The position numbers and the translations under genes are program-made. The notes under the pieces were generated by a model. The model made no database searches. It saw nothing but the letters and a program-made list of their open reading frames with translations, and was not told the DNA's origin. Positions 30,721 to 58,013 of a stretch of 64,000 nucleotides of DNA are shown here, one piece after another (position 1 is the stretch's first letter; each line of letters starts with the position of its first letter). Location of the stretch: positions 124,001-188,000 of the IMG/VR virus record IMGVR_UViG_3300021962_000021. One strand, 5' to 3'.

Positions 30721-30728
30721 ATATTTAT
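30721..30728 (+). promoter_or_regulatory. Putative late promoter ATATTTAT driving tail fibre and glycan operon
   Basis: 12 nt before the ATG at 30741. Confidence 0.55.
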
Positions 30729-30740
30729 TTAAAAAGATTA

Positions 30741-33700
30741 ATGGCGGTTCTAAAGAAAACATTATTTCCTGAAAATTTAGAAAAGTATTCCGTTCTCATT
30801 CAAGATACGGATACCAATAGTAAGTATTTTAAAATTACAGAGTTACCCGATACCTTTACAGGAGGTAAAAATGCATTCTTAATTCAAGGTTCTGAATTTT
30901 TAGTTGCTGATACTATTGTAAAAATAGAAATCAAAGATTCTCAAGGTAATATAATTTATCACGAACCAGGTGAGGGTATACCCGAATATTATGAGGGAAC
31001 TTCAAAAGTTATAGCGGTTTACATTTATCCAGATACGGCATTTGGTCCATGTACAATTACAATATTGGGTGAAGTTTCGGAATATGTTGATGCAAATGGT
31101 ATAAAGCAACCCGTTCCGTTACAATATAGAGATACTTACAATGTAAGATGGCAGAAAGAAATAAATGTAAATCCATTTTTACAAAATAATACAAAAATTC
31201 GTTTTTACAAAAGACCGCAGGTAGAGATAACCGAAATTTTAAAACCTGTATTTACTATCACCGAAACAAGAATAGCACAAGGTGGTAATACATCTTTATA
31301 TCCAACGGATTATTATGTAAATAATACTTTTGGTAAATTTGGTGACCAATATATTTTACCAGATGATTTGGAATATTTTGCTACATTACTAAATGGACAA
31401 ACTTTTCAAAATAATATGTTGGGCGAAACTATGAGTTTTTCATCCTATCCAACTTATACTCCAGAAATATTAGAAATTATATCAGCTGATACTGCTAAAA
31501 TTAATCCTCCCTTAATAGAATCCGATATTGTTCAGACGGTTATGACAACACCATATTCTGTTACATATTTATCCGGTTCAGATAGAACGCAATCCGAATT
31601 TACATCATCATATGCAAATATAAAATTATCTCAATTGGAAACATTTGCGGGTGATGTAAAAAGAGTAAAAGTATTTAGACGTTCTAAAGGTAGTATTTCT
31701 GATTATGAATTGGTGCAAGATATTTTATTAGAATCGACAGAGTTATTGATTACATTGGAAGGTAGTAGTAGAGCAGTTCAATCTACTGGTATTTTTGATT
31801 CTGAAATTTTATCAAAATATTGGAATACTACGGAAACTTTAACATCCACTTTATCAAATTCAAGATTAGTAAATGGAGTTAAATTAAATGGTGGTGGTAA
31901 GTTTTTATATACATCATCTTTAGATTTAACATCCAAAACCGTTTATGAATTACAATTTGATGCGTTTTATAGTTCATCAACTGCATCGGATTTAGATATA
32001 TACATAAGTGGTTCAACTACAACAAATAGTTCATCTATTGGTGAATTAAAAATAGGAACTTTAACCGGTATATCACCGACTAAAAAATTTGAAAATCAAA
32101 TAGTTCAATTTAAATTGGATGTAACGGAACCATCGGCATCACTATATTTTAGCGCATCACAAGGTGAATGGCATCTATCAGATTTAAGTTTAGTTGTATC
32201 AGCAGAAACAGCATTTTCACCCGACTCTGTTGCATTTTTGACATCTGTTCCAACGACCGTTCCAAATGAAATATTTGAATTTAAATTTGAATTTTATGAT
32301 GTAAATAATAATTTCGTTCCAATAACGATATTAAAAGAAAAACAATTTTCAGGTGGAACAAATACAGTTATTGTTTTAACTCAATTGGCTTCATCATCGG
32401 TTGAGTTAAGTTCTTCGATTGCATCGGCATCTTTAGATTTAACAAACACAATATCTTCCGTTTCACAATCTATTAGTGGAACAGTCACAGTAAATAGTGC
32501 ATCTGCGTATACAACAATTACAAATGTAAGTAGTTCGGTTAGTGGTTCGATATTTAGTTTGAGTGGAAGTGTTAGTGGAACAATAGGCAGTGTGAGTGCA
32601 TCTGTAAGTGGGACTATCGGACAAGTTAGTAGTTCGGTAAGTGGAACAATAGGTAGTGTGAGTGCATCAGTGAGTGGGACTATTGGTCAAGTAAGTGGTT
32701 CAATTAGTGGTTCAATATATACATTAAGTGGAAGTGTTAGTGGTTCGATAGCAAATGTTAGTTCATCTATAAGTTCATCATTATCTACGGCAAATTCGCA
32801 ATCATTATATACCGTTTATTCGGCATCTGCATATTTGGATAAATTTATTTTTACGGATGAAAATGGTAAGGTAAAAAGACCACCAACCGCATCTGTATCT
32901 GGTCTTTATACGGGAGATACTCATTTAGGATTTTATGGTGGTGGTGTTTGGAAAACTTATATGGATAATCAGGGTGATTTTTATTTAACATCATCTGCGG
33001 TTAATGGTGGGTTTTTAGCATGGAGTTCGACACAAGGTAGATTACAAATCGCCGGAGATATAAATATTCAAGGTGGTAATGCCGCAACAACTACTGCTTT
33101 ATCATCTTCATTAAATGCAGTAAGTGGTGCCATAAATTCCGCAACCGCTTCTTTATCTACATCCGTTGCATCTACAACATTTACAACAGCAACTGGTTTA
33201 ATTGCAAAACCACCAACCGTATTAGTTGGTTCTACTGCCGGTCTTTATTTGGGAAGTTCTTATTTAGGATATTATAATGGAAGTGATTGGAAAACCTATA
33301 TGGCCAATAATGGTAACTTCTATTTAAGTGGAACAGGAACCGATTCATTAACTTGGAATGGTAGCACTTTAACAATCAATGGTGCAATAACTGTTACGGG
33401 TGGTAATGCTGCAACATCGGCAGCTTTAACATCTTCGTTATCATCCACATTAAGTTCTGCAAATTCGACTGCAGCTGGGTATGCTGCAAATGCGGTGACA
33501 TCTGGTTCAGTATCTGCGGCAGCTGCACAAACGGCTGCACAATTATTTGCAACAAGTATAGGAACTAACGCTGTAGCATCAGGTTCAGCTGCAGCATCTG
33601 CTGCACAGACTGCGGCAATAAATCAGGCCAAAACGGATGCATCCGCCTCTATTAATTTATTAGCTAATGGTAACTGGACAGGTGGTAGTGGAACATTTAT

Positions 33701-35822
33701 AACTGCTACATCTATTTCATCGCCTGTAATCGCAGGTAATGGTGGATATATTTCAGGTTTATTTGTAGTTGGAAGTGGTGGAGCAATAACATTGGATGGT
33801 GTAAATAAAAAAATGTATATTGGAACGGGAACATATAATAATACCAATACATCTTTTTATGTAGATAATTCGGGTCAATTTTCTTTAAAAGATAAATTAA
33901 CTTGGGATGGAACAACATTGACAGTAAATGGTGCCGTTAATATTACAGGAGGTAGTGCTGCCAGTGCAATAACAAATTTAAATAGTGCAACATCTTCATT
34001 AGCAAGTTCGGTATCAACTGCACAATCAACTGCAAATACAGCGGTATCAAATGCTTCAACGGCACAATCTACCGCAAATACTGCAAATACAAAAGCAGAT
34101 ACTGCACAATCACAATTAACAGCAATAGGTTCGCAATCTGGTTCTTGGGTAAATCCATCAAACTACAATTTCGGTGGAAGTGGATTTGCATTGGCAAACG
34201 CAGCACCTGCGGGCTCTGGATTATATTTGGGTGCAAATTATTTGGGGTATTATAATGGTAGTTCTTGGAAATCTTATATGGATAATTCGGGTAACTTTGG
34301 TTTACAAGGTAGTGCGGGTTATTTAACATGGACCGCCGCATCCGATGCATTGGCTATAAAAGGAGATATTACTGCAACGAATATAACAGCAACAAACACA
34401 GGAAATATTGCAGGGTGGACACTAAGTTCCGATTCTTTATCAAAATCAACGGGTAGTTTTAGTTTAAGATTAACAACTTCAGGAAACAAACCAGCTATTG
34501 TTATTAGAGAAACAAATAGTGTGGATTATTTGGATAGATTGAGAATTAATGCCGATTTAACCATTCCTGCAATTAATATTAGTGATACGGGATCGTTGGG
34601 GTATTCTAATAGTTCACAAATACTTGCAACCGTATATGGGTCGGATAATCCGCCATATCAAGATGGTAATACGGGATACGATATGGCTGCATATGGGCAT
34701 ATCAACTATGGATATGGGTATGGTATAATTGGTTTACAATACGCATCTGAAGAGATATTTGTGGAAGCGGACCAGTTTCCAAGCATATCAAATATTATTT
34801 CAGGCCAATGTGATTATCAGGAATCTATTACAGGATATTGGGATTGTTATTTAAGAGTTAGACAATTCCCATCGGCAGTAGATGCACAAAATGAAACAAA
34901 TGTAAATACTTCTTTTGGATTTGGTGGAGAACAATTAATATTGTTAGCTTCAGCGCAATATTATGAATATAGTGGTCAAGTATATACCGATGTTCAAAAT
35001 AAATACGGTGGAACAATTAAAGCACCAGGAGGTGGGGGTATTAACACGGTGGGGACAGCCGTTTGGTATAGAGTTGAAATCATACAATATTATTATGGAT
35101 ATGTGGATGGAACCGCAAATAGTTTTATAAGAATTAGAAGGCCGGCAGGAGATATTATTGTAAAATTTGGTAGAGTTGGTAATGGTTATTCGATATTCTC
35201 TCCGGGCGGTATACAGGTTTATCAGGGTTTTAAAAACTATATGAATGCGGCTGATGTTTCTGCAAAAGCAGCGGGTCTTGATTCGGAGGCAGCTGCGAAC
35301 ATAAACTTTTTTGAAGTAAAAGGAAAATCGGGTATAATTGGTTCATTATCAATATCGGAAGGTTTAACTGGAAAATATAAAAACTTTAAAATACAACATC
35401 CAATACATGAAAACAAATGGTTATATCATACAGCAATAGAAGGACCTAGAGCAGATTTGATGTATAGAGGGACCGTTGAATTGTTAAACGGAGAAGCAAT
35501 GTGTTCAATAGATTCTGCCTCAAAAATGACGGAAGGAACTTTTTATAATCTATCAAGAAATGCACAATTATTTTTACAAAACGAATCAGGATTTGATAGA
35601 ATTAAAGGAAATATTATTAGTGGTTCTATAAATATACAATGTGAAAATACTCAATCAACCGATGTGGTTAGTTGGTTAGTTGTTGCCGAAAGAAATGATC
35701 CAGATATAATAGATTCACCACTATATGATAGAAATAAAAATTATAGAACGGAAAAATATAAAAACGATTTTTTATTACAGGCTAAAAATGAATTAATACA
35801 AAGAATAAGTGGTAGTATATGA
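30741..35822 (+). CDS. Long tail fibre / receptor-binding protein (1693 aa)
   Basis: Globular N-terminus, Ser/Ala coiled-coil stalks, repeated beta modules, C-terminal KNFKIQHP...LYHTAIEGPRADLMYRG chaperone-like segment typical of fibre ends. Confidence 0.75.
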   Translation: MAVLKKTLFPENLEKYSVLIQDTDTNSKYFKITELPDTFTGGKNAFLIQGSEFLVADTIVKIEIKDSQGNIIYHEPGEGIPEYYEGTSKVIAVYIYPDTAFGPCTITILGEVSEYVDANGIKQPVPLQYRDTYNVRWQKEINVNPFLQNNTKIRFYKRPQVEITEILKPVFTITETRIAQGGNTSLYPTDYYVNNTFGKFGDQYILPDDLEYFATLLNGQTFQNNMLGETMSFSSYPTYTPEILEIISADTAKINPPLIESDIVQTVMTTPYSVTYLSGSDRTQSEFTSSYANIKLSQLETFAGDVKRVKVFRRSKGSISDYELVQDILLESTELLITLEGSSRAVQSTGIFDSEILSKYWNTTETLTSTLSNSRLVNGVKLNGGGKFLYTSSLDLTSKTVYELQFDAFYSSSTASDLDIYISGSTTTNSSSIGELKIGTLTGISPTKKFENQIVQFKLDVTEPSASLYFSASQGEWHLSDLSLVVSAETAFSPDSVAFLTSVPTTVPNEIFEFKFEFYDVNNNFVPITILKEKQFSGGTNTVIVLTQLASSSVELSSSIASASLDLTNTISSVSQSISGTVTVNSASAYTTITNVSSSVSGSIFSLSGSVSGTIGSVSASVSGTIGQVSSSVSGTIGSVSASVSGTIGQVSGSISGSIYTLSGSVSGSIANVSSSISSSLSTANSQSLYTVYSASAYLDKFIFTDENGKVKRPPTASVSGLYTGDTHLGFYGGGVWKTYMDNQGDFYLTSSAVNGGFLAWSSTQGRLQIAGDINIQGGNAATTTALSSSLNAVSGAINSATASLSTSVASTTFTTATGLIAKPPTVLVGSTAGLYLGSSYLGYYNGSDWKTYMANNGNFYLSGTGTDSLTWNGSTLTINGAITVTGGNAATSAALTSSLSSTLSSANSTAAGYAANAVTSGSVSAAAAQTAAQLFATSIGTNAVASGSAAASAAQTAAINQAKTDASASINLLANGNWTGGSGTFITATSISSPVIAGNGGYISGLFVVGSGGAITLDGVNKKMYIGTGTYNNTNTSFYVDNSGQFSLKDKLTWDGTTLTVNGAVNITGGSAASAITNLNSATSSLASSVSTAQSTANTAVSNASTAQSTANTANTKADTAQSQLTAIGSQSGSWVNPSNYNFGGSGFALANAAPAGSGLYLGANYLGYYNGSSWKSYMDNSGNFGLQGSAGYLTWTAASDALAIKGDITATNITATNTGNIAGWTLSSDSLSKSTGSFSLRLTTSGNKPAIVIRETNSVDYLDRLRINADLTIPAINISDTGSLGYSNSSQILATVYGSDNPPYQDGNTGYDMAAYGHINYGYGYGIIGLQYASEEIFVEADQFPSISNIISGQCDYQESITGYWDCYLRVRQFPSAVDAQNETNVNTSFGFGGEQLILLASAQYYEYSGQVYTDVQNKYGGTIKAPGGGGINTVGTAVWYRVEIIQYYYGYVDGTANSFIRIRRPAGDIIVKFGRVGNGYSIFSPGGIQVYQGFKNYMNAADVSAKAAGLDSEAAANINFFEVKGKSGIIGSLSISEGLTGKYKNFKIQHPIHENKWLYHTAIEGPRADLMYRGTVELLNGEAMCSIDSASKMTEGTFYNLSRNAQLFLQNESGFDRIKGNIISGSINIQCENTQSTDVVSWLVVAERNDPDIIDSPLYDRNKNYRTEKYKNDFLLQAKNELIQRISGSI
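32529..32792 (+). repeat. Eight 33-bp (11-aa) Ser-rich repeats, e.g. SSSVSGTIGSV / SASVSGTIGQV
   Basis: Hendecad periodicity visible in protein and DNA, including a near-identical 66-bp duplication. Confidence 0.85.
32901..34335 (+). repeat. Three ~40-aa modules GLYxGxxxLG(F/Y)YxGxxWK(T/S)YMxNxG(D/N)F
   Basis: Copies begin at 32901, 33240 and 34218, separated by Ala/Ser/Thr stalks. Confidence 0.85.
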
Positions 35823-36793
35823 TAGTATTCATAACAACGGGTTACGGAAAAAATGTTATAGGGGGTTCTGATATTTGGTGCAATAACTTTGTAGAAAATA
35901 TACTCCCTTTAATAAAAGAAGATTACAAAATAATTGTGGTTGGTAGACCTTTAATAAAAGAAGAAGGTGCAATTTATACATACGAAAACGAAGAAGAAGT
36001 AAAAAAAATATTAGATGAATGTGAAAAAATTGTTATCCTTCATCATCCATATAAAAAGTGGGAATTACTTCAAAATTACTTTCATAAAATACACACAACA
36101 TTTGTTCATGCTTTCATACCAGATGTAGTTGGATTGAATGATGAATACGAAAACCTAATGACAAGATTAGATTGGCATTGGCAAAAAGACCTTTTAGATA
36201 ATTCTAAAAACATAGTTTGGATTGGTTATGAGAGTGATACAATTCATACTTATTTTCCAAATACAATCACAATAACAAACTATTATGAATGGAAACACAA
36301 TAAACCATTTGTTCCAATAGTTAGTAATAGAATTGGTTATGCTGCAAGATGTGAAACGAGAAAGAATGCACATTATTTAGATAAAATACCCGCTTTCATA
36401 TTTTCAAACAAATATGATTACAAACGATTATTGGATGTATCTAAAATAAATTCGGAAGTTCATCAATTTATAGAATTTGATTATAAATTTCACAACAAAT
36501 TTTTTGAAAAGAATTTTCAAATATTTCATGGAGCATATACTAAAGAACCATTTGGTTATGCAATCTTCGATGCAATTGATAATGGTAAACTACCAATATT
36601 AGATACGAATTGGATGAAGGGAATTAAGTATCGTTATAGAGCAATGAATAAAGAACAATTTCATTATCAATATCTTCGTATACTTGAAGATGATTTTGAA
36701 AAAAATAAAAAACAATTTGATAGATTAAAAAAAGGTCTTGAAAAATATACAAACAAAGAAAAATGGATTACTGAAATATTAAAGGTTATATGA
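35819..36793 (+). CDS. GT-B fold glycosyltransferase (GT4-like)
   Basis: N-terminal IGGSD and C-terminal EPFGYAIFDAIDNGKLPIL (E-x-F-G...E/D-A...G-x-P); ATGA overlap with the tail-fibre stop. Confidence 0.7.
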   Translation: MIVFITTGYGKNVIGGSDIWCNNFVENILPLIKEDYKIIVVGRPLIKEEGAIYTYENEEEVKKILDECEKIVILHHPYKKWELLQNYFHKIHTTFVHAFIPDVVGLNDEYENLMTRLDWHWQKDLLDNSKNIVWIGYESDTIHTYFPNTITITNYYEWKHNKPFVPIVSNRIGYAARCETRKNAHYLDKIPAFIFSNKYDYKRLLDVSKINSEVHQFIEFDYKFHNKFFEKNFQIFHGAYTKEPFGYAIFDAIDNGKLPILDTNWMKGIKYRYRAMNKEQFHYQYLRILEDDFEKNKKQFDRLKKGLEKYTNKEKWITEILKVI

Positions 36794-39760: not shown

Positions 39761-39762
39761 AA

Positions 39763-40629: not shown

Positions 40630-40637
40630 AAGGTTAT

Positions 40638-42086: not shown

Positions 42087-42088
42087 AA

Positions 42089-42388: not shown

Positions 42389-42391
42389 TAA

Positions 42392-43822: not shown

Positions 43823-43823
43823 T

Positions 43824-45281: not shown

Positions 45282-45285
45282 AATT

Positions 45286-47447: not shown

Positions 47448-47448
47448 T

Positions 47449-48420: not shown

Positions 48421-48421
48421 T

Positions 48422-49596: not shown

Positions 49597-49597
49597 T

Positions 49598-50803: not shown

Positions 50804-51240
50804 AAGTAATAATTGATATAGATAATACACTTTGTATTAGTAATGAAAGATTTAGATTAGCAACAAAACCTGATGGAAAAATAGATTGGGATATTGCACA
50901 TAGAATAGACCTTATAGAAAAAGATAAACCAAACTGGCCAATGATTGATTTGGCAAAAAAATATAAGAAAGATGGATTCGAAGTTATTGTTTTAACAGGA
51001 AGACCAGAATCGGTTGAAAAGGTTACGGAAGAGTGGTTGGAAAAATATGGTGTAGAATATGACCAATTGATTATGAGAAATCGCAGTTCACATTTTTTAA
51101 AAGCTCCTGTTTATAAAGAGAAAGCATATAAAACTCTAATAAAATCAGATGTATTTTGTGCATATGATGATGAGGAAGAAATAATACAAATGTGGAATAG
51201 TTTGGGAATACCGGCATTTAAAGTTTATGGAATTGATTGA
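50800..51240 (+). CDS. HAD-family phosphatase (PseT phosphatase-domain-like)
   Basis: DIDNTL (motif I), LTGRP (II), K, AYDDE (IV). Confidence 0.85.
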   Translation: MKVIIDIDNTLCISNERFRLATKPDGKIDWDIAHRIDLIEKDKPNWPMIDLAKKYKKDGFEVIVLTGRPESVEKVTEEWLEKYGVEYDQLIMRNRSSHFLKAPVYKEKAYKTLIKSDVFCAYDDEEEIIQMWNSLGIPAFKVYGID

Positions 51241-52210: not shown

Positions 52211-52211
52211 T

Positions 52212-53639
52212 ATGGAACATATGCATGGTTCTAAATTTAAATTAGTTTATACCGATTGGTATATACAGAGTGGTGAAAGAAAACCATTTGGTAATGGAAT
52301 TCATCCTGCAATAAGACAATTTATTCAATATGTTCATAGAAATAATTTGAATATAGATTATTATAGAATGTTACAATATGAACAAGAACAAAAAGGAATT
52401 CCATTTGACCATTCGGAATTATTAAATTATTTTGCAAGAAATTTTGAAAATAATATTATCAACATTACACAGATAGAAGATGATGAATATACATACATTT
52501 ATCCTTTAGAAATAAAAGCGACATTAAGTTATCTAACCGCAGAGAATAAATTTTTTTTAAATGATGTAAATTATGTTTGGAAACTAAAAGATATTATTCC
52601 AACGGAAATGATTGAATATTTTAAATCGGGAAAAGTAAAAATTTTAGTAAACATAATACACGACCCATTATATGATGATTACAATATAAGGGAGTTTGAA
52701 TTAGAAATGAACAAATTGGGTATAAATGGGTCTAATATTATTGTGTTAGGTGGTAGCGAATTTACAGAATATTATCAAAAACATCCACATAGTAAAGTAA
52801 AAATTTATAATGGCCATTTATTTATAAAGGGATATGCGGATATGATGAAAAAATTTCCAGAAAAGGGAGATTTAGGATATATTTGTGATTTGGCAAGAAT
52901 AGAAGATTTATCTGAAAATGCGATAAGACCTTACAAATTTTTGTGTAATAATAAAACAATGTCTAAACCACATAGAGTTGCAATGGCCTATTTTTCAATA
53001 AAATATGATTTACTATCGGAAGGGTTATTTTCTTTTATACAAAAATTATCAAAGGATGAATTATTGAGAAATGTTACATCTTTAATAGATAATCCAAATA
53101 AAGAATATATTGATACGATAGAATCAATGATACCATATGAATTGGATACACAAAATTTGGAAGAAAGACAAAAAGCACATTTCGGAGCAAAAAACAATAT
53201 GAAAGAATGGTATACGGATACATATATAAATTTAGTTACCGAAACTTTTTTTGGTAGAAATGTATTCTTATCGGAAAAAATATTTAAACCATTATCTAAT
53301 TTACAACCATTTATTGTATTAGGTGATTATGGAACATTGGCAGAATTAAAAAGATTAGGATTCAAAACATTTGAACCATTTATTGATGAGAGTTATGATT
53401 TAGAAATTGAAAGAAAAAAGAGAATTAAAAAAATTGAAATTGAAATTGAAAAATTAAAAAATAAATCAATAGAAGAAATACACAATTGGTATTATTCTAT
53501 AAAAGAAATACTTATACATAATCAGAATCATTTGTATACATTTGATAAATACGAATGTTTTGAAGAAATATTTCAAAAAATAAAATTAGATTACGAAAAA
53601 GAAAAGTTATGGAATTCTCAGGAAAAAAAGTTATTGTAA
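52212..53639 (+). CDS. Hypothetical protein, ET..SEK..KP family (possibly GT10-like glycosyltransferase)
   Basis: INLVTET..FLSEKIFKPLSNLQPFIVLG..LKRLGFKTF..IDESYD. Confidence 0.5.
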   Translation: MEHMHGSKFKLVYTDWYIQSGERKPFGNGIHPAIRQFIQYVHRNNLNIDYYRMLQYEQEQKGIPFDHSELLNYFARNFENNIINITQIEDDEYTYIYPLEIKATLSYLTAENKFFLNDVNYVWKLKDIIPTEMIEYFKSGKVKILVNIIHDPLYDDYNIREFELEMNKLGINGSNIIVLGGSEFTEYYQKHPHSKVKIYNGHLFIKGYADMMKKFPEKGDLGYICDLARIEDLSENAIRPYKFLCNNKTMSKPHRVAMAYFSIKYDLLSEGLFSFIQKLSKDELLRNVTSLIDNPNKEYIDTIESMIPYELDTQNLEERQKAHFGAKNNMKEWYTDTYINLVTETFFGRNVFLSEKIFKPLSNLQPFIVLGDYGTLAELKRLGFKTFEPFIDESYDLEIERKKRIKKIEIEIEKLKNKSIEEIHNWYYSIKEILIHNQNHLYTFDKYECFEEIFQKIKLDYEKEKLWNSQEKKLL

Positions 53640-54607
53640 CCGGAGCAAACGGATTGGTCGGATTACCAGCAGTTAAAAAATGTTTAGAAGAAGGTGCTGC
53701 AAAAGTATACGCAGTTGACCTTAGATTTAGTGAAAATTTAAACTTTCTAAAAGGACAGCATCCTGATAGATTGGTATTAATTAAAACGGATTTAACTTAT
53801 CTTTCTCATTGTGAAGATTTATTCACTATGGATAAGATTGATATTGTATTACATATCGCGGGTGTAAAAGGTTCACCGGCTCGTTCATCAACGCAACCAG
53901 CAGATTACCTATTCCCAATGTTGATGTTCAATACTAATATGATTAAAGCATCATTTGATGCAAAGGTAGATTGGTTTGTATATCTTTCATCGGTTGGTGT
54001 ATATAAGCCGGCAGAAGTAATGAATGAAGAAGATACTTGGAATCAGGAAGAAACTTGGGCATCAACTCCATCTCGTTTAGATTGGCATCCAGGTTGGACA
54101 AAAAGAATGGGTGAATTAACATTGGATTCTTTAAGAGTTCAATATGGTTGGAAAAATTGGACAGTAATTAGACCTTCAAACATATATGGTATTAATGATA
54201 ACTTTGCACAAGATGCAACGGTGATTAGTTCTAATATTTGGAAATTATTTAATGTAGAGGGTGAGGAAATGGTATGTTGGGGTAATGGTTCTTCTCGTAG
54301 AGATTTCGTATTTGGTGATGATGTTGCACAAGCTACAATTGATGTAGTTAAAAAGGAAGTTAGTGATATTATCAACTTTGGATGTGCAGAAGCAGTAACT
54401 ATTAAAGAAACAATTGAAACTATTGTAGAATGTTATAAAGAATTAACAGGAGAAACCAAAACTATTGTATGGGATGAAACCAAAACAAATGGTGACCCAA
54501 TTAGATGTTTAGGTTCTAAAAAACAAAAACAATATAGTATTCTTCCACAAACATCATTAAAGGAAGGTATTATGAAATCTATTAAAGAATATAAGAGTAG
54601 ATTATAA
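53609..54607 (+). CDS. GDP-fucose-synthase-like extended SDR with non-canonical active site
   Basis: TGANGLVG, RPSNIYG, WGNGSSRRDF; YxxxK is replaced by PGWTK. Confidence 0.8.
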   Translation: MEFSGKKVIVTGANGLVGLPAVKKCLEEGAAKVYAVDLRFSENLNFLKGQHPDRLVLIKTDLTYLSHCEDLFTMDKIDIVLHIAGVKGSPARSSTQPADYLFPMLMFNTNMIKASFDAKVDWFVYLSSVGVYKPAEVMNEEDTWNQEETWASTPSRLDWHPGWTKRMGELTLDSLRVQYGWKNWTVIRPSNIYGINDNFAQDATVISSNIWKLFNVEGEEMVCWGNGSSRRDFVFGDDVAQATIDVVKKEVSDIINFGCAEAVTIKETIETIVECYKELTGETKTIVWDETKTNGDPIRCLGSKKQKQYSILPQTSLKEGIMKSIKEYKSRL

Positions 54608-55290
54608 TGGAAATGTATGCATTTGGTTGCTCCTTTACGGATGGCGTTGGGTTGCAAAATAATAAAACAGAAGCATATCCCATATTATTGGGTAAAAAGT
54701 TGGGATTAAATGTTTATAATATGGGGTCTGCGGGACAATCTAATGATTATATTTTTAGAAATGTTTTTGCACATTTAAAAACTCATATAAAAAAAGATGA
54801 CATTATTTTAATTCAATGGACACATTATATAAGAAAAGAAATTCCAATACAATATAATAATAGAAATTTATATTTAGTTGCACCCAATTGTTTCAATGCA
54901 TTACAAACCGGAACAGCGGATAGTTTATCAAAAAATTGTGTAGGCCAGTATGTTAATCAAAATTTAGAAAGTGATAATGAAGAAATAAAAAAAGAGTATA
55001 AGGATTTTTATAATGAATATATTCTTAAAGCATTGCATGAGGAATATCAAATAACAACAACTGAAAATTATATAAATTCTTTATACACATATCTTGAACA
55101 TAATGGATATAAACACATTCATTTTTTTGGTTGGGATTCTTGTAAAGAACCTTTTAATTTTTATTTTAATAAAATATTAGAAGATACTTTTGGTGGATAC
55201 ACAAATACAAAAAATAATGACCATCCTGATAAAATTGGACATGAGAATTGGGCAAATTATTTAGAAGATAAAATAAAAAAAATGTTATGA
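54607..55290 (+). CDS. SGNH/GDSL-like protein
   Basis: FGCSFTDG, GSAGQSN, IQWT, DHPDKIGH. Confidence 0.65.
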   Translation: MEMYAFGCSFTDGVGLQNNKTEAYPILLGKKLGLNVYNMGSAGQSNDYIFRNVFAHLKTHIKKDDIILIQWTHYIRKEIPIQYNNRNLYLVAPNCFNALQTGTADSLSKNCVGQYVNQNLESDNEEIKKEYKDFYNEYILKALHEEYQITTTENYINSLYTYLEHNGYKHIHFFGWDSCKEPFNFYFNKILEDTFGGYTNTKNNDHPDKIGHENWANYLEDKIKKML

Positions 55291-56324
55291 AACATATAGT
55301 AGTATCGGGTTGTTCATTTACAAATAATTTTAGAATTAATATAGGAGATGAAAGGAGATGGGAAAATGACCCAATAGAAGATTGGACATGGGCAAATTGG
55401 TTACAATATAATTTACAAAAGACTCATGTTTTACACAACTATGGTGCACTAACACATGATAATAAAAGTATTGTTCGTTCTATAATTTATAAAGTTACGG
55501 ATTTATTAAAAGAAGGAATTAATCCGGAAGATATATCAGTAATTGCACAATGGACAACATTGACAAGAAATTCTTTTTTTATTACTCCCGAAAAATACGA
55601 TAGTGTAAATCCTGCATTAAGATATCAAAAGTATAATGAAAGTTGGGCTCACACCACAGATTATCTGATAAACGGTAAAGATAAAGTATCACCGTATCAG
55701 CAGGGGTATTTTCACCTAACAGGTGGATTTAATCCTACAAATAATCCAATTAATATAGACCCGGTTACATTTGAATGGTTAGATAAAGTAATGACATATA
55801 ACGAAAGATATTTTGAATGGTTTGAATATATGAACATGCTTTTAGATTTTCTTCACAATAAAGGAATTACAAAAATTAAGTTTTTTTGTATGAATAATAA
55901 TTTTAGTAAAAAATATTTAGGTGAAGGAAGAACACCACCATATTATCATACACCAAAGGAAAAATCCGTATACGAATGTATTATAGAAAATAAAGATATT
56001 TGTAATACTTGGGAACAAAAAGAATTACAATTTGAAAATGCATATGTAAAATCATATGCCGATAAAATAGATTTCAAAAAATATTTTTGGTTTTTTGAAG
56101 AAAATTCCTTACATTTGTTTGGTGGTCTAATTGAATGGTCAATTAGAAATTTTGATTACAATATGGATAGTGATTTACCAAAAGTATTGTGGAGAGAAAT
56201 GAATGGAATGGATTTAGACGAACAAAAAAAATATTTAGAAAGAAGTTGGTATGGGCACACATCATCTATACTAACTAAAAAATTTGTTAATGATGTGGTA
56301 TTAAATTGGGATATTTTAAAATAA
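55287..56324 (+). CDS. SGNH/GDSL-like protein
   Basis: SGCSFT, AQWT, C-terminal GHTS. Confidence 0.55.
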   Translation: MKHIVVSGCSFTNNFRINIGDERRWENDPIEDWTWANWLQYNLQKTHVLHNYGALTHDNKSIVRSIIYKVTDLLKEGINPEDISVIAQWTTLTRNSFFITPEKYDSVNPALRYQKYNESWAHTTDYLINGKDKVSPYQQGYFHLTGGFNPTNNPINIDPVTFEWLDKVMTYNERYFEWFEYMNMLLDFLHNKGITKIKFFCMNNNFSKKYLGEGRTPPYYHTPKEKSVYECIIENKDICNTWEQKELQFENAYVKSYADKIDFKKYFWFFEENSLHLFGGLIEWSIRNFDYNMDSDLPKVLWREMNGMDLDEQKKYLERSWYGHTSSILTKKFVNDVVLNWDILK

Positions 56325-56328
56325 ATTT

Positions 56329-57321
56329 ATGAATAAAACGGACAAGATTTTAGTTACAGGAGCAAGTGGTTTTATCGGCTCACACCTATTGAGATTATTA
56401 TGGGAAAAAGGATATAGAAACCTAAGAGCAACATCTTATAGTAGAGATTTAAAAAACGATTTCGAAGGAACATCGGAAGTTGAATTTTACAAAGGAAATT
56501 TACAAGATGCGGATTTTTGTAAAGAAGTTTCTAAAGATGTAAATGTAGTATTCCACTGCGCAGCAAACACATCAAACGCATTGGATACGAAAGAAAATCC
56601 ACTATTACATGTTACTCCAAATGTGGAAATGAATGTAAATTTAATGGAACAAAGTTGGAGAAATAGTGTAAGTAAATTCTTATTCATTTCATCTAATACT
56701 TCTTATCCTGATATGGGTAGTGATTGGTGCACAGAAGATATAAATGTTCATGCAACACCTACATTTCCAATTTATGGAGCAGTTGGTAATATGAAAAGAT
56801 ATGGTGAATTACTTTGTCATTTCTTCTCAAATCAAATTCATAACCCAATGCAATGTTTGATTGTTAGACCTTCAAATGCATTCGGACCAAACGACAAATT
56901 TGATTATGAAAAATGTCATGTTACTCCTGCAAACATCAGAAAAGTAGCAGATGGCTTAAATCCAATTCCAGTGTGGGGTGATGGAACGGAAGTTAGAGAT
57001 TTGTTGCATGTAGAAGATATGGCAGATGGTTTTATCTTTGTTGCAGAAAATAATGACAAGTATGATATATTTAATGTTTGTTATGGAGAAGGATTTAGTG
57101 TAAACGAAGTATTAAGTTGGATTAAAGAAGCAGATAACAACAATAATCCAGTTGAATATGTGAATAACAAAGCACCTATGATTCCGGTTAGATTAATGTC
57201 ATCTAAGAAAATAAACGCTGCAGGTTGGAAACCTAAGAGAGATTTAAAAACTGCTTTAAAAGAAACTATCGAATGGTATAAAGCAAATAAACATTTGTAT
57301 AATCCAAATTCAAAACCATAA
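56329..57321 (+). CDS. GDP-fucose-synthase-like extended SDR with non-canonical active site
   Basis: TGASGFIGS, RPSNAFGPNDKFD, CHVTPANIRK, WGDGTEVRD; YxxxK is replaced by VGNMK. Confidence 0.85.
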   Translation: MNKTDKILVTGASGFIGSHLLRLLWEKGYRNLRATSYSRDLKNDFEGTSEVEFYKGNLQDADFCKEVSKDVNVVFHCAANTSNALDTKENPLLHVTPNVEMNVNLMEQSWRNSVSKFLFISSNTSYPDMGSDWCTEDINVHATPTFPIYGAVGNMKRYGELLCHFFSNQIHNPMQCLIVRPSNAFGPNDKFDYEKCHVTPANIRKVADGLNPIPVWGDGTEVRDLLHVEDMADGFIFVAENNDKYDIFNVCYGEGFSVNEVLSWIKEADNNNNPVEYVNNKAPMIPVRLMSSKKINAAGWKPKRDLKTALKETIEWYKANKHLYNPNSKP

Positions 57322-57863
57322 TGAGTAAGCCAGAATTTTCACCATATAAGGATGAATTGACAAAAGCAATGAATTTTCTTTCTGAAAAAGAGGATACGGT
57401 TTTCATTGGACAGCAAATAGTTTATGCCGGAAATCCAATGTCAACTACATTGAATGATGTTCCAAAGGAAAAAATGATTGAAGTTCCTGTTATGGAAGAA
57501 ACACAAATGGGAATGAGTTTAGGACTTGCAATAACAGGTAAAACGGTAATATCATTTTATCCAAGATGGGATTTTTTAGTTTCCGCAGCAAATCAGTTAA
57601 TTAATCATGCTGATAAATTTGAACATATGACCGGTAAAAAGGTCAATGTTATTGTTAGAGTCGGTGTTGGTAGTAAAGACCCATTGGATCCAGGTATTCA
57701 GCATAGAAACGATTATACCGATGAATTCCAATCAATTCTTCAATTTACAAAAGTTCATAAATTAAAAAAAATAGAAGATATTTATAAAATATATACTGAA
57801 GCATATGAGCAAGGTGGTATTCATATAATAGTGGAATGGCCTGAATTATATTATAAAAACTAA
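57321..57863 (+). CDS. ThDP-dependent enzyme, short PDH E1-beta/transketolase pyrimidine-binding subunit
   Basis: EVPVMEETQMGMSLGLA, YPRWDFL..AANQLIN, PGIQH; only 180 aa. Confidence 0.85.
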   Translation: MSKPEFSPYKDELTKAMNFLSEKEDTVFIGQQIVYAGNPMSTTLNDVPKEKMIEVPVMEETQMGMSLGLAITGKTVISFYPRWDFLVSAANQLINHADKFEHMTGKKVNVIVRVGVGSKDPLDPGIQHRNDYTDEFQSILQFTKVHKLKKIEDIYKIYTEAYEQGGIHIIVEWPELYYKN

Positions 57864-57866
57864 ATT

Positions 57867-57995
57867 ATGTTTAAAAAATTACCTATCATCTCATTTTTCA
57901 TTAAAAAATATGAAAATTATAAGATGAAAAAGAAAATTCAGAAAAAATTAGAGGAACTCAAAAAGAGAGACCCATTCGTTTATAAGAATTTCTAA
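57867..57995 (+). CDS. Small basic hypothetical protein (42 aa), missed by ORF track
   Basis: MFKKLPIISFFIKKYENYKMKKKIQKKLEELKKRDPFVYKNF*; fills the gap on the coding strand. Confidence 0.65.
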   Translation: MFKKLPIISFFIKKYENYKMKKKIQKKLEELKKRDPFVYKNF

Positions 57996-58004
57996 TATTT
58001 TAGG

Positions 58005-58013
58005 ATATTTATA
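58005..58013 (+). promoter_or_regulatory. Putative late promoter ATATTTATA
   Basis: 4 nt (from the 8-mer) before the ATG at 58017. Confidence 0.55.

What the first reader, a model, noticed from the sequence alone, without database searches (positions are those of the whole stretch)
30721..57995. Tail-fibre-coupled ~22-kb glycan operon: candidate autonomous virion glycosylation system
Seen: after the tail fibre, 23 consecutive + strand genes run with overlaps or gaps of at most 8 nt. The first (GT4-like) starts in an ATGA overlap with the fibre stop codon, and I see no terminator or promoter motif in any gap. The nearest promoter is the late-type ATATTTAT at 30721. The content spans nucleotide-sugar synthesis (RmlC, 3 SDRs, E1 alpha/beta), transfer (GT4-like, GT-A, 3 GT7, gPRT-like, 2 possible GT10-like) and tailoring (methyltransferase, 3 SGNH, 2 radical SAM). 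Known: giant viruses (chlorovirus, Mimiviridae) and some mycobacteriophages glycosylate their own virion proteins. Inference: late co-expression with the fibre favours building an elaborate glycan on the virion over modifying DNA or the host surface.
Basis: partly seen in the sequence, partly recalled or inferred. Interest (0 to 1): 0.9.

Follow-up and report, generated by a model that had tools for sequence, protein, structure and literature searches.

The report
Jumbo-phage fibre-linked glycosylation gene island
A large uncultured freshwater phage carries, fused to the end of its tail-fibre gene, 23 tightly packed genes for making unusual sugars and attaching them to something inside the cell. 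The target is most likely one of its own virion proteins, but that has not been shown.

Summary
After the 1693-aa fibre-like gene (30741-35822), 23 + strand genes plus a 42-codon ORF run to 57995 with gaps of -46 to +8 nt. The first gene overlaps the fibre stop codon (ATGA).

- a GT-B/GT4-like transferase, by fold
- a GT-A, borderline
- three GT7 enzymes (beta-1,4-galactosyltransferase-like) with an inserted LamG lectin domain
- two divergent GT-B-like proteins
- a methyltransferase
- three SGNH-like proteins
- two radical SAM enzymes
- RmlC
- three SDRs
- a split E1 alpha/beta pair

No protein has a membrane helix.

ATATTTAT is a real promoter-like motif, but "late" is unproven.

Hundreds of metagenomic relatives keep the order fibre, then island, then a conserved downstream gene. 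The left half is a conserved cassette and the right half is mosaic. A few relatives have no island, and one distant relative has the cassette without a fibre beside it.

Sister islands carry true prolyl-4-hydroxylase homologues next to hydroxyproline-type glycosyltransferase families. The window has a prolyl-hydroxylase-like oxygenase just upstream of the fibre.

Best reading: cytoplasmic protein glycosylation, probably of the fibre or another virion protein (about 0.5). DNA glycosylation and host-glycan remodelling are not excluded.

The parts
29711..29718 (+). ATATTTAT promoter-like motif, 12 nt before the oxygenase gene
   Evidence: One of 8 + strand copies that sit 12-31 nt before a gene start.
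29723..30448 (+). 2OG-Fe(II) oxygenase of prolyl-hydroxylase type (241 aa). A candidate member of the system.
   Evidence: Pfam 2OG-FeII_Oxy_3, E 1e-10. Best PDB sequence matches are a HIF prolyl hydroxylase (E 1e-7) and a P4H alpha-domain protein (E 2e-3). Paralogues lie inside the islands of L041, L042, L061 and L071.
30445..30630 (-). Small conserved minus-strand ORF (61 aa) of unknown role, possibly a regulator. It is the only minus-strand gene here.
   Evidence: ORFs of 54-60 aa are called at the same place in L019, L020 and L022.
30721..30728 (+). ATATTTAT promoter-like motif, 20 nt before the fibre gene
   Evidence: A copy sits 20-31 nt before the fibre gene in every relative examined.
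30741..35822 (+). Tail-fibre-like protein (1693 aa). It has a conserved N-terminal part, a Ser/Thr/Ala-rich middle with repeats, and a C-terminal domain shared with cyanophage fibre-like proteins.
   Evidence: No Pfam fibre domain. Residues 1547-1675 match P-SSM2 'tail fiber' and S-TIM66 'virion structural protein' annotations. Homologues in L020 and L022 carry Peptidase_S74. 438 residues lie in windows with at least 40% Ser+Thr.
35819..36793 (+). GT-B fold, GT4-like glycosyltransferase (324 aa). Its start overlaps the fibre stop codon. It is the first gene of the conserved cassette.
   Evidence: Model pLDDT 91.6. Foldseek matches GlgM, PimA, BshA, WaaG and Gtf3, and also T4 BGT and AGT. It has 124 metagenomic homologues and no Pfam domain. 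The alignment shows an EPFGY...D.GK.PI motif.
36790..38124 (+). Divergent GT-B-like protein (444 aa), a distant paralogue of 52212-53639
   Evidence: Weak BLAST links. It aligns within family A2. No Pfam, NCBIfam or PDB sequence hit.
38121..39005 (+). SGNH-like hydrolase or acyltransferase (294 aa)
   Evidence: N-terminal NGCSFS motif, and BLAST E 5e-6 to 55287-56324.
39002..39760 (+). SAM-dependent methyltransferase (Methyltransf_24). The ATG at 39002 is preferred over the TTG at 38960.
   Evidence: Pfam E 1.4e-10. Relatives are 252 aa and 80-87% identical.
39763..40629 (+). GT-A type glycosyltransferase (288 aa), borderline
   Evidence: Glyco_tranf_2_4 at 27.0 bits against a cut-off of 27.5. 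Conserved within the cassette at 47-81% identity.
40638..42086 (+). GT7 (beta4GalT-like) enzyme with an inserted LamG lectin domain. Its acidic motif is degenerate.
   Evidence: Pfam GT7N, GT7C and Laminin_G_3. In alignment A4 the EDDD motif is replaced.
42089..42388 (+). Small helical protein (99 aa) conserved within the cassette; role unknown
   Evidence: Homologues of 60-106 aa share a conserved core in many relatives.
42392..43822 (+). GT7 enzyme with an inserted LamG domain. The DVD and WGWGFEDDD motifs are intact.
   Evidence: Pfam E 9e-21, 3e-18 and 9e-13; alignment A4.
43824..45281 (+). GT7 enzyme with an inserted LamG domain. The DID and WDWGMEDDD motifs are intact.
   Evidence: Pfam; alignment A4. 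It has 1816 metagenomic homologues and no match in cultured phage records.
45286..46701 (+). Twitch-domain radical SAM enzyme (471 aa)
   Evidence: NCBIfam N_Twi_rSAM at 353.5 bits against a cut-off of 170. Conserved at 52-96% identity in relatives.
46698..47447 (+). Unknown protein (249 aa), faintly similar to the LamG part of 42392-43822
   Evidence: BLAST E 0.04 only. No family hit.
47449..48420 (+). Extended SDR acting on nucleotide sugars (epimerase, dehydratase or reductase)
   Evidence: Pfam Epimerase E 5e-35. Below every NCBIfam equivalog cut-off.
48422..48967 (+). RmlC-type 3,5-epimerase
   Evidence: Pfam dTDP_sugar_isom E 4e-32. NCBIfam rmlC scores 106 bits, below its cut-off of 156.
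48967..49596 (+). TPP-binding protein like the E1 alpha subunit (209 aa, short)
   Evidence: Pfam E1_dh E 9e-17. NCBIfam PDH E1 alpha E 3e-24, below its cut-off.
49598..50803 (+). Radical SAM enzyme (401 aa)
   Evidence: Pfam Radical_SAM at 51.6 bits, plus Fer4_12.
50800..51240 (+). HAD-family phosphatase (146 aa)
   Evidence: Pfam HAD_PNKP E 3.5e-17 and Acid_phosphat_B E 8e-11.
51227..52210 (+). Unknown protein (327 aa).
   Evidence: No hit in Pfam, PHROGs, NCBIfam or PDB.
52212..53639 (+). Divergent GT-B-like glycosyltransferase (475 aa). Its family recurs 2-3 times per island in relatives.
   Evidence: Model pLDDT 86.6. Foldseek finds only GT-B enzymes at E 1e-4 to 1e-3, with TM about 0.3: trehalose-6-phosphate synthase, SdgB, GtfA, TarM and the GT10 enzyme FUT13. 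Paralogues are listed.
53609..54607 (+). Extended SDR, closest to GDP-L-fucose synthase
   Evidence: Pfam Epimerase E 9e-33. NCBIfam Fcl E 4e-34, below its cut-off.
54607..55290 (+). SGNH/GDSL-like protein (227 aa)
   Evidence: Pfam Lipase_GDSL E 6e-4. N-terminal FGCSFTDG motif.
55287..56324 (+). SGNH-like protein (345 aa). Its family has up to 2-3 copies per island in relatives.
   Evidence: Alignment A3 shows an SGCSF motif and a conserved His near the C-terminus. DUF6071 hit is weak.
56329..57321 (+). Extended SDR, similar to GDP-fucose synthase, GalE and 4,6-dehydratases
   Evidence: Pfam Epimerase E 1e-45. Below NCBIfam cut-offs.
57321..57863 (+). Protein like the pyrimidine-binding domain of the E1 beta subunit (180 aa). 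Partner of 48967-49596.
   Evidence: Pfam Transket_pyr at 22 bits, below its cut-off. NCBIfam PDH E1 beta E 5e-9. It co-occurs with the alpha-like gene in L028, L036, L054 and L075.
57867..57995 (+). 42-codon ORF. Whether it codes for protein is not established.
58005..58012 (+). ATATTTAT promoter-like motif that starts the next transcription unit. It marks the right-hand boundary of the island.
   Evidence: The same motif lies at -12 in most relatives.
58017..61901 (+). Conserved boundary gene (1294 aa) with an NMNAT-like nucleotidyltransferase N-terminus. Not counted as part of the glycan system.
   Evidence: It follows the island in all relatives, including those with no island.

Best explanation
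The island is a phage-encoded toolkit of soluble proteins for glycosylation in the cytoplasm.

Shown by sequence and fold:
- Seven glycosyltransferase-like proteins: one GT4-like GT-B, one GT-A, three GT7 enzymes with an inserted LamG lectin domain, and two divergent GT-B-like proteins.
- Sugar-nucleotide tailoring enzymes: RmlC, three SDRs, a split TPP-dependent pair like E1 alpha/beta, two radical SAM enzymes and a HAD phosphatase.
- Glycan-decorating enzymes: an O-methyltransferase-type protein and three SGNH-like proteins.

Inferred:
1. The enzymes take host NDP-4-keto-6-deoxyhexoses and make rare sugars. One is probably a 6-deoxyhexose carrying a two-carbon branch, made by the E1-like pair as in paulomycose and eurekanate synthesis.
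2. The transferases build an oligosaccharide on a protein acceptor during virion assembly. The genes are transcribed with the fibre gene from the ATATTTAT motif at 30721. The first transferase is translationally coupled to the fibre.
3. The most likely acceptor is the fibre itself, at its Ser/Thr-rich middle or at hydroxylated prolines made by the adjacent prolyl-hydroxylase-like oxygenase. Another virion protein is also possible.
4. The inserted lectin domains would hold the enzymes on an already glycosylated, multivalent substrate.
5. The mosaic right half of the island would give each phage lineage a different glycan.
For: - Packing and junction. Junctions run from -46 to +8 nt, and the ATGA overlap with the fibre stop is conserved across fibres with different C-terminal domains.
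- Promoter-like motif. It is placed non-randomly before genes. It precedes the fibre in every relative and has no copy inside the window's island. Where relatives have internal or detached modules, these carry the same motif (L018, L022, L034, L054, L075). The island therefore shares a regulatory class with the fibre, baseplate and other virion-region genes.
- Soluble machinery. No island protein has a membrane helix, so there is no Wzx, Wzy, WecA or ABC-transporter type component.
- Protein-directed chemistry at this locus. The window has a prolyl-hydroxylase-like oxygenase. L010 has, directly after its fibre, a PF11397 'GlcNAc' transferase (E 1e-37), a GT2 and a P4H homologue (E 2e-26 to solved P4Hs). 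L022 and L019 have an SGNH-HPAT fusion (26.2 bits, above its cut-off) plus a 2OG oxygenase. L120, L128 and L135 have a P4H-type gene between the fibre and the cassette.
- Linkage. About 30 of roughly 55 informative relatives have the cassette directly after the fibre or within 1-4 genes of it. Even the 484-kb phage LR756508 keeps a homologue of the first transferase and a GT32-like gene next to the fibre-N-terminus homologue.
- Ser/Thr-rich tracts. Fibres from 30 loci with a cassette have 51-438 residues in such tracts, against 0, 0 and 55 for the 3 loci without. One-sided Mann-Whitney p = 0.003, not corrected for phylogeny.
- GT7 signatures are intact in two of the three paralogues.
- The role of E1-like pairs in adding two-carbon branches to deoxysugars comes from PMC4802897.
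- Precedent for phage virion glycosylation is cited in PMC12619734.
Against: - No acceptor is demonstrated. Everything about the target is inferred from context.
- In L018/L084 the cassette is not next to a fibre.
- In L020 the fibre differs strongly while the island is kept.
- Fold matches for the first transferase include the T4 DNA glucosyltransferases and other phage DNA glycosyltransferases.
- In L041 a 2OG oxygenase domain is fused to a sugar SDR. That suggests some of these oxygenases act on sugars rather than on prolines.
- No conserved proline motif was found in the fibres.
- The motif also heads a unit of replication and recombination genes, so late timing is unproven.
- The Ser/Thr correlation rests on three island-free fibres, which are also shorter.
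- Ser/Thr-rich tracts are common in fibres generally.
- S74-type fibres usually shed their C-terminal chaperone. The conserved SGSI tail is therefore unlikely to be a glycan site on the mature fibre in those phages.
Confidence: 0.5

Rival explanations
1. The island remodels host envelope glycans. Its soluble transferases and sugar-nucleotide enzymes would feed into or hijack the host's own lipid-linked LPS, capsule or general O-glycosylation pathways during infection. This could block superinfection or stop progeny phage from sticking to cell debris, as has been proposed for the LPS gene clusters of cyanophages.
For: - The enzyme families (RmlC, SDRs, GT-A, GT-B, O-methyl and O-acyl tailoring) are typical of O-antigen and capsule loci.
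- The GT7 catalytic domain alone has homologues in bacterial genomes, including Pelagibacteraceae single-cell genomes.
- Content varies between lineages as in serotype loci.
- That cyanophage P-SSM2 carries LPS gene clusters is from my own knowledge and was not tested here.
Against: - None of the 23 proteins has a membrane helix. There is no initiating phosphoglycosyl transferase, flippase, polymerase, ligase or transporter.
- The island shares its promoter-like motif, and a translationally coupled junction, with the fibre gene.
- Prolyl-hydroxylase and hydroxyproline-type transferase families in sister islands point to protein acceptors.
- The GT7+LamG fusion occurs only on phage-like contigs.
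Confidence: 0.18
2. The island hypermodifies DNA. Its transferases would add a mono- to oligosaccharide to a hydroxylated base in phage DNA to evade restriction and CRISPR defences, using sugars made by the island.
For: - The first transferase matches T4 beta- and alpha-glucosyltransferases, the SP-15 glycosyltransferase and annotated phage DNA alpha-glycosyltransferases by fold.
- The island lies next to replication and recombination genes: endonuclease I, primase and Mre11-Rad50.
- Multi-sugar DNA glycans and variable glycosyltransferase sets are known in phages (PMC13326640; bioRxiv 10.1101/2023.12.21.572611).
- All the proteins are soluble.
Against: - The same fold search ranks GT4 enzymes for small-molecule, lipid and protein acceptors higher, so the fold does not indicate the acceptor.
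- No thymidylate-synthase-like hydroxylase or hydroxymethylase, and no TET/JBP-type oxygenase, was found among the window genes scanned. The oxygenases here are of P4H/PHD type.
- Lectin-domain insertions, seven transferase-like proteins, hydroxyproline-type transferases, and O-methyl and O-acyl tailoring are not features of known DNA glycosylation systems.
- Only 64 kb of the 238-kb genome could be inspected.
Confidence: 0.12
3. The island glycosylates a host protein, or makes a free glycosylated small molecule, as part of host take-over. It would not decorate the virion.
For: - The enzyme set resembles that of oligosaccharide antibiotic pathways: an E1-like pair, radical SAM enzymes, 2OG oxygenases, methyltransferases and GT-B enzymes. 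AviGT4 appears among the fold matches, and the paulomycin and avilamycin precedents are in PMC4802897.
- The cassette can exist away from the fibre.
- Cytoplasmic hydroxyproline glycosylation of a regulatory protein is known for Skp1 (PMC3515798).
Against: - There is no scaffold-forming enzyme such as a PKS or NRPS, and no exporter.
- Lectin-domain fusions and several paralogous transferases suggest a polymeric, repetitive acceptor.
- Linkage to the fibre is conserved in most relatives, along with the shared promoter-like motif.
Confidence: 0.1

Closest known systems
Virion glycosylation in mycobacteriophages (Freeman et al. 2023, as summarised in PMC12619734)
   Same: Phage-encoded soluble glycosyltransferases act in the cytoplasm on the phage's own structural proteins.
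   Different: Those phages are described with a couple of glycosyltransferase genes (two in Maravista, PMC11256854) and glycans on the C-termini of the capsid and tail-tube subunits. Here there are 23 genes, including sugar-nucleotide tailoring, GT7+LamG fusions and radical SAM enzymes. The genes are linked to a fibre gene. No modification has been observed.
Autonomous glycosylation machinery of giant viruses (chloroviruses, Mimiviridae; review PMC9614988)
   Same: The virus encodes its own rare-sugar synthesis and glycosyltransferases, independent of the membrane glycosylation route. The review covers virus-encoded glycan machinery. Clade-specific gene sets are from my own knowledge.
   Different: The host here is a bacterium and the virus is a tailed phage. 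The gene set is one operon-like block, not scattered genes. The enzyme families differ. The fold matches to tupanvirus glycosyltransferases are generic GT-B similarity.
Skp1 prolyl-hydroxylation and glycosylation pathway of Dictyostelium and Toxoplasma (PMC3515798)
   Same: It couples a cytoplasmic PHD/P4H-type 2OG oxygenase with soluble transferases that build an oligosaccharide on hydroxyproline. Sister island L010 has a PF11397-family transferase next to a P4H homologue. That PF11397 is the Gnt1 family is from my memory of the Pfam entry.
   Different: The window itself lacks a PF11397 or HPAT homologue. It has only the PHD-like oxygenase. No target proline has been identified. That pathway is eukaryotic and regulatory, not structural.
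Glycosylation of serine-rich repeat adhesins in Gram-positive bacteria (GtfA/GtfB, Gtf3, SdgB)
   Same: A GT4-type GT-B enzyme starts O-glycosylation of a Ser-rich fibrillar surface protein in the cytoplasm, and further transferases encoded beside the adhesin gene extend the glycan. Gtf3, GtfA and SdgB appear among the fold matches.
   Different: The fold similarity is generic to GT-B. There is no accessory Sec system. The acceptor here is unproven.
Two-carbon branched deoxysugar pathways (paulomycose Plm8/Plm9, eurekanate AviB1/AviB2; PMC4802897)
   Same: A pair resembling E1 alpha and beta sits beside a 3,5-epimerase and SDR reductases or dehydratases.
   Different: Both phage subunits are truncated (209 and 180 aa). 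The product sugar is unknown. The context is a phage, not an antibiotic gene cluster.
Phage DNA glycosylation systems (T4 alpha- and beta-glucosyltransferases; arabinosyl-5-hydroxycytosine in RB69 and DLP3, PMC13326640)
   Same: Soluble phage GT-B enzymes, sometimes with phage-encoded sugar-nucleotide synthesis, and content that varies between lineages.
   Different: No enzyme that hydroxylates or hydroxymethylates a base was seen. The oxygenases are of P4H type. Lectin-domain fusions and tailoring enzymes are present.
'Moraphages', freshwater jumbo phages of 200-307 kb with four core glycosyltransferase orthogroups (PMC12619734)
   Same: Freshwater origin, genome size class (this contig is 238 kb), predicted Bacteroidota hosts, and several conserved glycosyltransferases.
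   Different: I could not test whether this phage belongs to that lineage, because no moraphage sequences were available. That paper does not describe the island, its link to the fibre or its enzymes.

Membership tests
GT-B fold glycosyltransferase, GT4-like (35819-36793) | Two Rossmann-like domains with a GT-B topology | tested here: met
   Model pLDDT 91.6. There are 128 PDB matches at E <= 1e-3, and all 50 listed top hits are GT-B enzymes.
GT-B fold glycosyltransferase, GT4-like (35819-36793) | Sequence membership in Pfam Glycos_transf_1 / CAZy GT4 | tested here: not met
   No hit in Pfam, NCBIfam or the PDB sequence profile search. Only an EPFGY...D.GK.PI motif resembles the GT4 C-terminal motif.
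GT7 (beta-1,4-galactosyltransferase family) | Pfam Glyco_transf_7N and 7C domains above their gathering scores | tested here: met
   All three paralogues pass.
GT7 (beta-1,4-galactosyltransferase family) | DxD metal site and the WGWG.EDDD acidic motif | tested here: met
   Both motifs are present in 42392-43822 and 43824-45281. The acidic motif is degenerate in 40638-42086.
GT10-type fucosyltransferase (36790-38124 and 52212-53639) | Sequence or fold match specific to GT10 | tested here: inconclusive
   No Pfam hit in 29 family members. The fold is GT-B-like. The GT10 structure 7yro ranks only 12th, at E 1e-3 and TM about 0.3.
dTDP-4-dehydrorhamnose 3,5-epimerase (RmlC) | Pfam domain, and the NCBIfam equivalog cut-off | tested here: inconclusive
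   The Pfam domain is met (111.6 bits against 27). The NCBIfam rmlC score of 106 bits is below its cut-off of 156. It is an RmlC-fold epimerase whose substrate is unassigned.
E1-like pair for two-carbon branched sugars (Plm8/Plm9 type) | Separate alpha-like (TPP-binding) and beta-like (pyrimidine-binding) subunits in a deoxysugar gene context | tested here: met
   The alpha-like gene scores E 9e-17. The beta-like gene is weak (22 bits in Pfam, E 5e-9 in NCBIfam). The two co-occur with RmlC and SDR genes in four relatives.
E1-like pair for two-carbon branched sugars (Plm8/Plm9 type) | Transfer of a C2 unit from pyruvate to an NDP-ketosugar | not testable with these tools
   Needs an enzyme assay.
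Twitch-domain radical SAM (NCBIfam N_Twi_rSAM) | Score above the curated cut-off | tested here: met
   353.5 bits against a cut-off of 170.
Phage virion glycosylation system | A glycan covalently attached to a virion protein | not testable with these tools
   Needs glycoproteomics of virions.
Phage virion glycosylation system | Soluble phage-encoded glycosyltransferases co-regulated with structural genes | tested here: met
   No membrane helices. The promoter-like motif is shared with the fibre and baseplate units, and the junction with the fibre gene is coupled. The timing class itself has not been measured.
Wzx/Wzy- or ABC-dependent surface polysaccharide locus | An initiating phosphoglycosyl transferase, a flippase or transporter, and a polymerase or ligase (all membrane proteins) | tested here: not met
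   None of the 23 proteins has a predicted membrane helix or a matching family.
Phage DNA glycosylation system | An enzyme that makes a hydroxylated or hydroxymethylated base (a thymidylate synthase homologue or a TET/JBP oxygenase) | tested here: inconclusive
   None was found among the window genes scanned. Only 64 kb of the 238-kb genome was available.
Hydroxyproline-linked protein glycosylation (P4H plus a hydroxyproline-specific transferase) | A prolyl-4-hydroxylase homologue | tested here: met
   Window 29723-30448 is of PHD/P4H type at E 1e-7. The L010 homologue reaches E 2e-26 against solved P4Hs.
Hydroxyproline-linked protein glycosylation (P4H plus a hydroxyproline-specific transferase) | A transferase of a hydroxyproline-specific family (PF11397 or HPAT) | tested here: not met
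   Absent from the window's island. Present only in the sister islands L010, L019 and L022.

The most novel reading that the evidence does not exclude
An abundant lineage of freshwater jumbo phages builds a variable, lineage-specific glycan coat on its tail fibres by a eukaryote-like cytoplasmic O-glycosylation route. The route would use prolyl hydroxylation and/or Ser/Thr sites, beta4GalT-family enzymes guided by lectin domains, and phage-made rare sugars, including one with a two-carbon branch. The coat would act as a serotype-like trait that shapes adsorption or protects the virion.
Probability: 0.3. Interest if true: 0.85.

Novelty: new variant of a known kind. Interest (0 to 1): 0.7.

Why it matters
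Glycosylation of a phage's own virion has been shown experimentally only in a few phages, notably mycobacteriophages with a couple of transferase genes. Large virus-encoded glycan machineries are known from giant viruses of eukaryotes.

This island would be by far the largest and most elaborate glycosylation module linked to a phage structural gene. It belongs to a lineage with hundreds of relatives in lake and other aquatic metagenomes.

It also contains enzyme types that have not been described in phages:
- GT7 enzymes with an inserted lectin domain (more than 1800 uncharacterised homologues, none in cultured phage records)
- an unannotated GT-B family
- a twitch radical SAM enzyme
- a truncated E1-like pair

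If the target is the fibre, glycan diversity would become a second axis of host-range or defence evolution, alongside swapping of receptor-binding domains. If the target is DNA or the host envelope, the island would still be an unusually complex example of either.

Tried and rejected
- Nucleotide search of 20 kb of the region against cultured phage records found nothing.
- The sigma-70 promoter and intrinsic terminator scans gave no more hits than shuffled sequence. I treat them as uninformative, not as proof of a single transcript.
- PDB sequence searches with single proteins and with profiles found nothing for 35819, 36790, 52212 or 51227.
- Pfam scans of all 29 members of the 52212 family found nothing.
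- The BFVD fold search for the first transferase gave only generic GT-B matches and did not separate DNA from protein acceptors.
- I looked for a conserved Pro-Pro or other proline motif in the fibres as a hydroxylation site. None is shared.
- I considered the conserved C-terminal SGSI tail as a glycosylation tag. It also occurs in fibres not followed by the transferase, and in S74-type chaperone ends that are normally cleaved off. I therefore record it only as an observation.
- I considered the small protein 42089-42388 with its PPPP tail as a carrier peptide. Only its helical core is conserved, not the tail.
- I considered counting the downstream nucleotidyltransferase gene (58017-61901) as the missing sugar activator. 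It resembles NMN adenylyltransferases. Its homologue in L084 carries CCA-adding and 2H-phosphoesterase domains. It is also present in relatives without an island.
- Membership in the published 'moraphage' lineage could not be tested.
- No paper mentioning Microcystis phage Mel-JY01 was found.

Full report
**What the window is**

All long ORFs lie on the + strand and GC is about 30%. The genes found are:
- gp25-like and gp6-like baseplate proteins
- T7-type endonuclease I
- a primase
- a fused Mre11-Rad50
- peptide deformylase
- UvdE
- a carbamoyltransferase

The window is part of IMG/VR contig IMGVR_UViG_3300021962_000021, which is 238,219 bp. This makes it a jumbo tailed phage.

The nearest annotated relatives share about 40% identity in the baseplate wedge protein. 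They are Microcystis phage Mel-JY01, the Flavobacterium phage 'immuto' group and the 484-kb uncultured phage LR756508. Shine-Dalgarno sequences are mostly absent upstream of the genes. That fits a Bacteroidota or cyanobacterial host, but the host is unknown.

**The observation**

After the 1693-aa gene at 30741-35822 there are 23 + strand ORFs up to 57863, then a 42-codon ORF ending at 57995. Junctions run from -46 to +8 nt, and the first ORF overlaps the fibre stop codon in ATGA.

The sigma-70 and terminator scans are at or below shuffled expectation and say nothing either way.

The octamer ATATTTAT is not enriched overall: 16 copies on both strands against 25.5 expected. Its placement, however, is striking. 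Eight of the 11 + strand copies lie 12-31 nt before a start codon, in the few intergenic gaps. A simple binomial gives about 3e-11.

The motif precedes these units:
- the baseplate unit
- several genes of unknown function after the baseplate genes
- the oxygenase at 29723
- the fibre
- the gene at 58017
- a small ORF that heads the unit with endonuclease I, primase and Mre11-Rad50

It is therefore a phage promoter-like element. Calling it 'late' goes beyond the evidence.

No + strand copy lies between 31565 and 57778. In relatives the motif sits before the fibre gene in every case. Where a relative has a detached or internal island module, that module tends to carry its own copy. The island thus belongs to the same regulatory class as the fibre.

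**Is the 1693-aa protein a fibre?**

Pfam and PHROGs give no fibre domain. Three lines of evidence support the call:
- Its last 130 residues or so match proteins annotated as tail fibre or virion structural protein in cyanophages P-SSM2 and S-TIM66.
- Its N-terminal 330 residues or more are conserved across the lineage while the rest is swapped.
- Homologues in L020 and L022 end in a Peptidase_S74 intramolecular chaperone domain, which is typical of fibres and spikes.

I accept 'fibre-like' as well supported. No virion proteome exists for this phage.

**Gene content**

*Glycosyltransferases*
- 35819-36793 has no sequence-family hit. It belongs to a large, conserved, unnamed metagenomic family. 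It folds with high confidence into a GT-B enzyme closest to GT4 members.
- 39763-40629 is a borderline GT-A.
- Three paralogues carry both GT7 domains with a LamG lectin domain inserted within the catalytic domain. Two of them keep the DxD and WGWG.EDDD signatures of beta-1,4-galactosyltransferases.
- The GT7+LamG family has more than 1800 metagenomic homologues, all unnamed, and no match in cultured phage records. Bacterial genomes contain only the GT7 catalytic part. Full-length GT7+LamG matches there come from a few contigs in metagenome-assembled genome bins, most of them short.
- 52212-53639 and its distant paralogue 36790-38124 form a divergent GT-B-like family.

*Tailoring enzymes*
- a Methyltransf_24 methyltransferase
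- three SGNH-like proteins (38121, 54607, 55287)
- a twitch radical SAM enzyme (353 bits)
- a second radical SAM enzyme
- a HAD phosphatase

*Sugar-nucleotide enzymes*
- an RmlC-fold epimerase
- three extended SDRs, two of them closest to GDP-fucose synthase but below the curated cut-offs
- a truncated pair resembling E1 alpha and beta

Such E1-like pairs attach a two-carbon branch from pyruvate to 4-keto deoxysugars in paulomycose and eurekanate synthesis (PMC4802897).

*Unassigned or missing*
- 46698, 51227 and the small helical protein 42089 remain unassigned.
- There is no sugar-1-phosphate nucleotidyltransferase and no clear 4,6-dehydratase, so host nucleotide sugars must feed the pathway.
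- No protein has a membrane helix.

**Comparative genomics**

The fibre's N-terminal domain has about 400 relatives in IMG/VR. The gene order is conserved, including in LR756508 and Mel-JY01 for the flanking genes:
1. Mre11-Rad50
2. an optional oxygenase
3. a small minus-strand ORF
4. the fibre
5. the island
6. the homologue of 58017-61901

The left part of the island is a conserved cassette, kept down to about 35% identity:
1. the GT-B gene
2. the methyltransferase
3. the GT-A gene
4. the small helical protein
5. two or three GT7+LamG genes
6. the twitch radical SAM gene

The right part is mosaic. It shows different numbers of SDR, SGNH-like and GT-B-like paralogues, extra radical SAM enzymes, oxygenase paralogues, a fused cupin, nucleotidyltransferase and kinase protein, UDP-glucose dehydrogenase and NifU.

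Island size ranges from none (L055, L059, L100) through one or two genes (L063, L072) to about 28 kb. About 30 of roughly 55 informative loci have the cassette directly after the fibre or within four genes of it.

Two facts limit the 'fibre-coupled' reading:
- In the distant relative L018/L084 the cassette follows PhoH, has its own copy of the motif, and still ends at the 58017-type gene.
- In L020 Mre11-Rad50 is 99% identical to the window's, yet the fibre is a different 2457-aa S74-type protein while the island genes stay 62-96% identical.

**What is the acceptor?**

This is inference. Four points favour a protein:
1. The machinery is entirely soluble.
2. The window's oxygenase, just upstream of the fibre, is of the prolyl-hydroxylase type.
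3. Sister islands at the same position encode hydroxyproline-directed chemistry.
   - L010 has a PF11397 'GlcNAc' transferase (E 1e-37), a GT2 and a P4H homologue that matches solved bacterial, algal, human and chlorovirus P4Hs (E 2e-26 to 2e-13).
   - L019 and L022 have an SGNH-HPAT fusion above the Pfam cut-off, next to a 2OG oxygenase.
   - L120, L128 and L135 place a P4H-type gene between the fibre and the cassette.
   - That PF11397 is the family of the Skp1 hydroxyproline GlcNAc-transferase is from my memory of the Pfam entry. The Skp1 pathway itself is described in PMC3515798.
4. Lectin domains inserted into the GT7 enzymes suggest a repetitive substrate that is already glycosylated.

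For the fibre as the specific acceptor, the evidence is adjacency, the conserved ATGA junction, and longer Ser/Thr-rich tracts in fibres of island-bearing phages. Those tracts span 51-438 residues in 30 such loci, against 0, 0 and 55 in 3 loci without an island (p = 0.003, uncorrected for phylogeny or fibre length).

Evidence against:
- A 2OG oxygenase domain is fused to an SDR in L041, which hints that some of these oxygenases act on sugars.
- No shared proline motif was found in the fibres.
- The fold of the first transferase also matches phage DNA glucosyltransferases.

**Verdict**

The best explanation is a cytoplasmic protein-glycosylation island co-expressed with a virion protein, probably the fibre, and acting on it (confidence about 0.5).

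The rivals are:
- host glycan remodelling (0.18)
- DNA glycosylation (0.12)
- a host protein or small-molecule target (0.1)

Virus-encoded glycosylation is a known kind of system. It is seen in mycobacteriophages (as cited in PMC12619734) and in giant viruses (PMC9614988). This one is a new variant in its scale, its enzyme families, its operon-like fusion to a fibre gene and its serotype-like mosaicism. A 2025 paper on freshwater 'moraphages' notes four core glycosyltransferase orthogroups without analysing them (PMC12619734). Whether this phage belongs to that lineage could not be tested.

Noticed in passing
window 30445-30630 (- strand); motif copy at 30692-30699 (- strand): This is the only minus-strand gene in the region. 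It is a 61-aa ORF between the oxygenase and the fibre, and ORFs of 54-60 aa are called at the same place in L019, L020 and L022. An ATATTTAT copy on the minus strand lies about 60 nt upstream of it, so the 30631-30740 gap may hold divergent promoters. It could be a small regulator.
   Followed up: partly
window 35805-35822; L005, L007, L012, L016, L020, L088, L115, L136: Fibres whose stop codon is overlapped by the GT-B gene end in (I/T)SGS(I/V), even when their C-terminal domains are unrelated (window type versus Peptidase_S74 type). One Ser codon switches between AGT and TCT, which indicates conservation at the protein level. A similar ISGSL tail occurs in some fibres not followed by the transferase.
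   Followed up: partly
window 58017-61901; L084 20297-21581 (gene runs past the locus end): The conserved gene on the island's right border has an NMN-adenylyltransferase-like N-terminus. In L084 its 1822-aa homologue also shows CCA-adding (PolyA_pol) hits, a weak 2',5' RNA ligase hit and a faint Acb1 hit. It may be a large enzyme of nucleotide or RNA metabolism. Its function is unknown.
   Followed up: partly
window 5099-7554: A NodU/CmcH-type carbamoyltransferase (E about 1e-60) is followed by a GDSL-like protein, just upstream of the baseplate genes. These are further candidate glycan-tailoring enzymes outside the island.
   Followed up: no
window 26562-29711: Mre11-like phosphoesterase and Rad50-like ATPase are fused in one 1049-aa protein. 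The fusion is conserved across the lineage. In LR756508 the two parts appear as separate ORFs.
   Followed up: no
window 42089-42388 and homologues (e.g. L018 5807-5989, L022 12812-13006): A small helical protein with a strongly conserved core and variable tails sits inside the transferase cassette in nearly all relatives. The window copy has a PPPP-containing tail. Its role is unknown.
   Followed up: partly
L041 4995-6602: A 2OG-FeII_Oxy_3 domain is fused to a nucleotide-sugar SDR in one 535-aa protein. This suggests that some oxygenases in these islands modify sugars rather than proteins.
   Followed up: no
L018 7416-7961 (same gene as L084 6008-6553): A NifU/Nfu iron-sulfur scaffold gene is embedded between the GT7 genes and the radical SAM genes of a distant island. 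It presumably supports the radical SAM enzymes.
   Followed up: no
L013 16080-20933; L002 13773-15071: Weak, below-cut-off HINT or intein-like hits occur at the C-terminal ends of two proteins. One is a 1617-aa protein that replaces the cassette directly after the fibre in about eight relatives. The other is a 432-aa protein in LR756508.
   Followed up: no
whole window: ATATTTAT is less frequent than expected overall (16 against 25.5) yet concentrated before gene starts. This fits selection against stray copies of a functional promoter element inside genes.
   Followed up: partly
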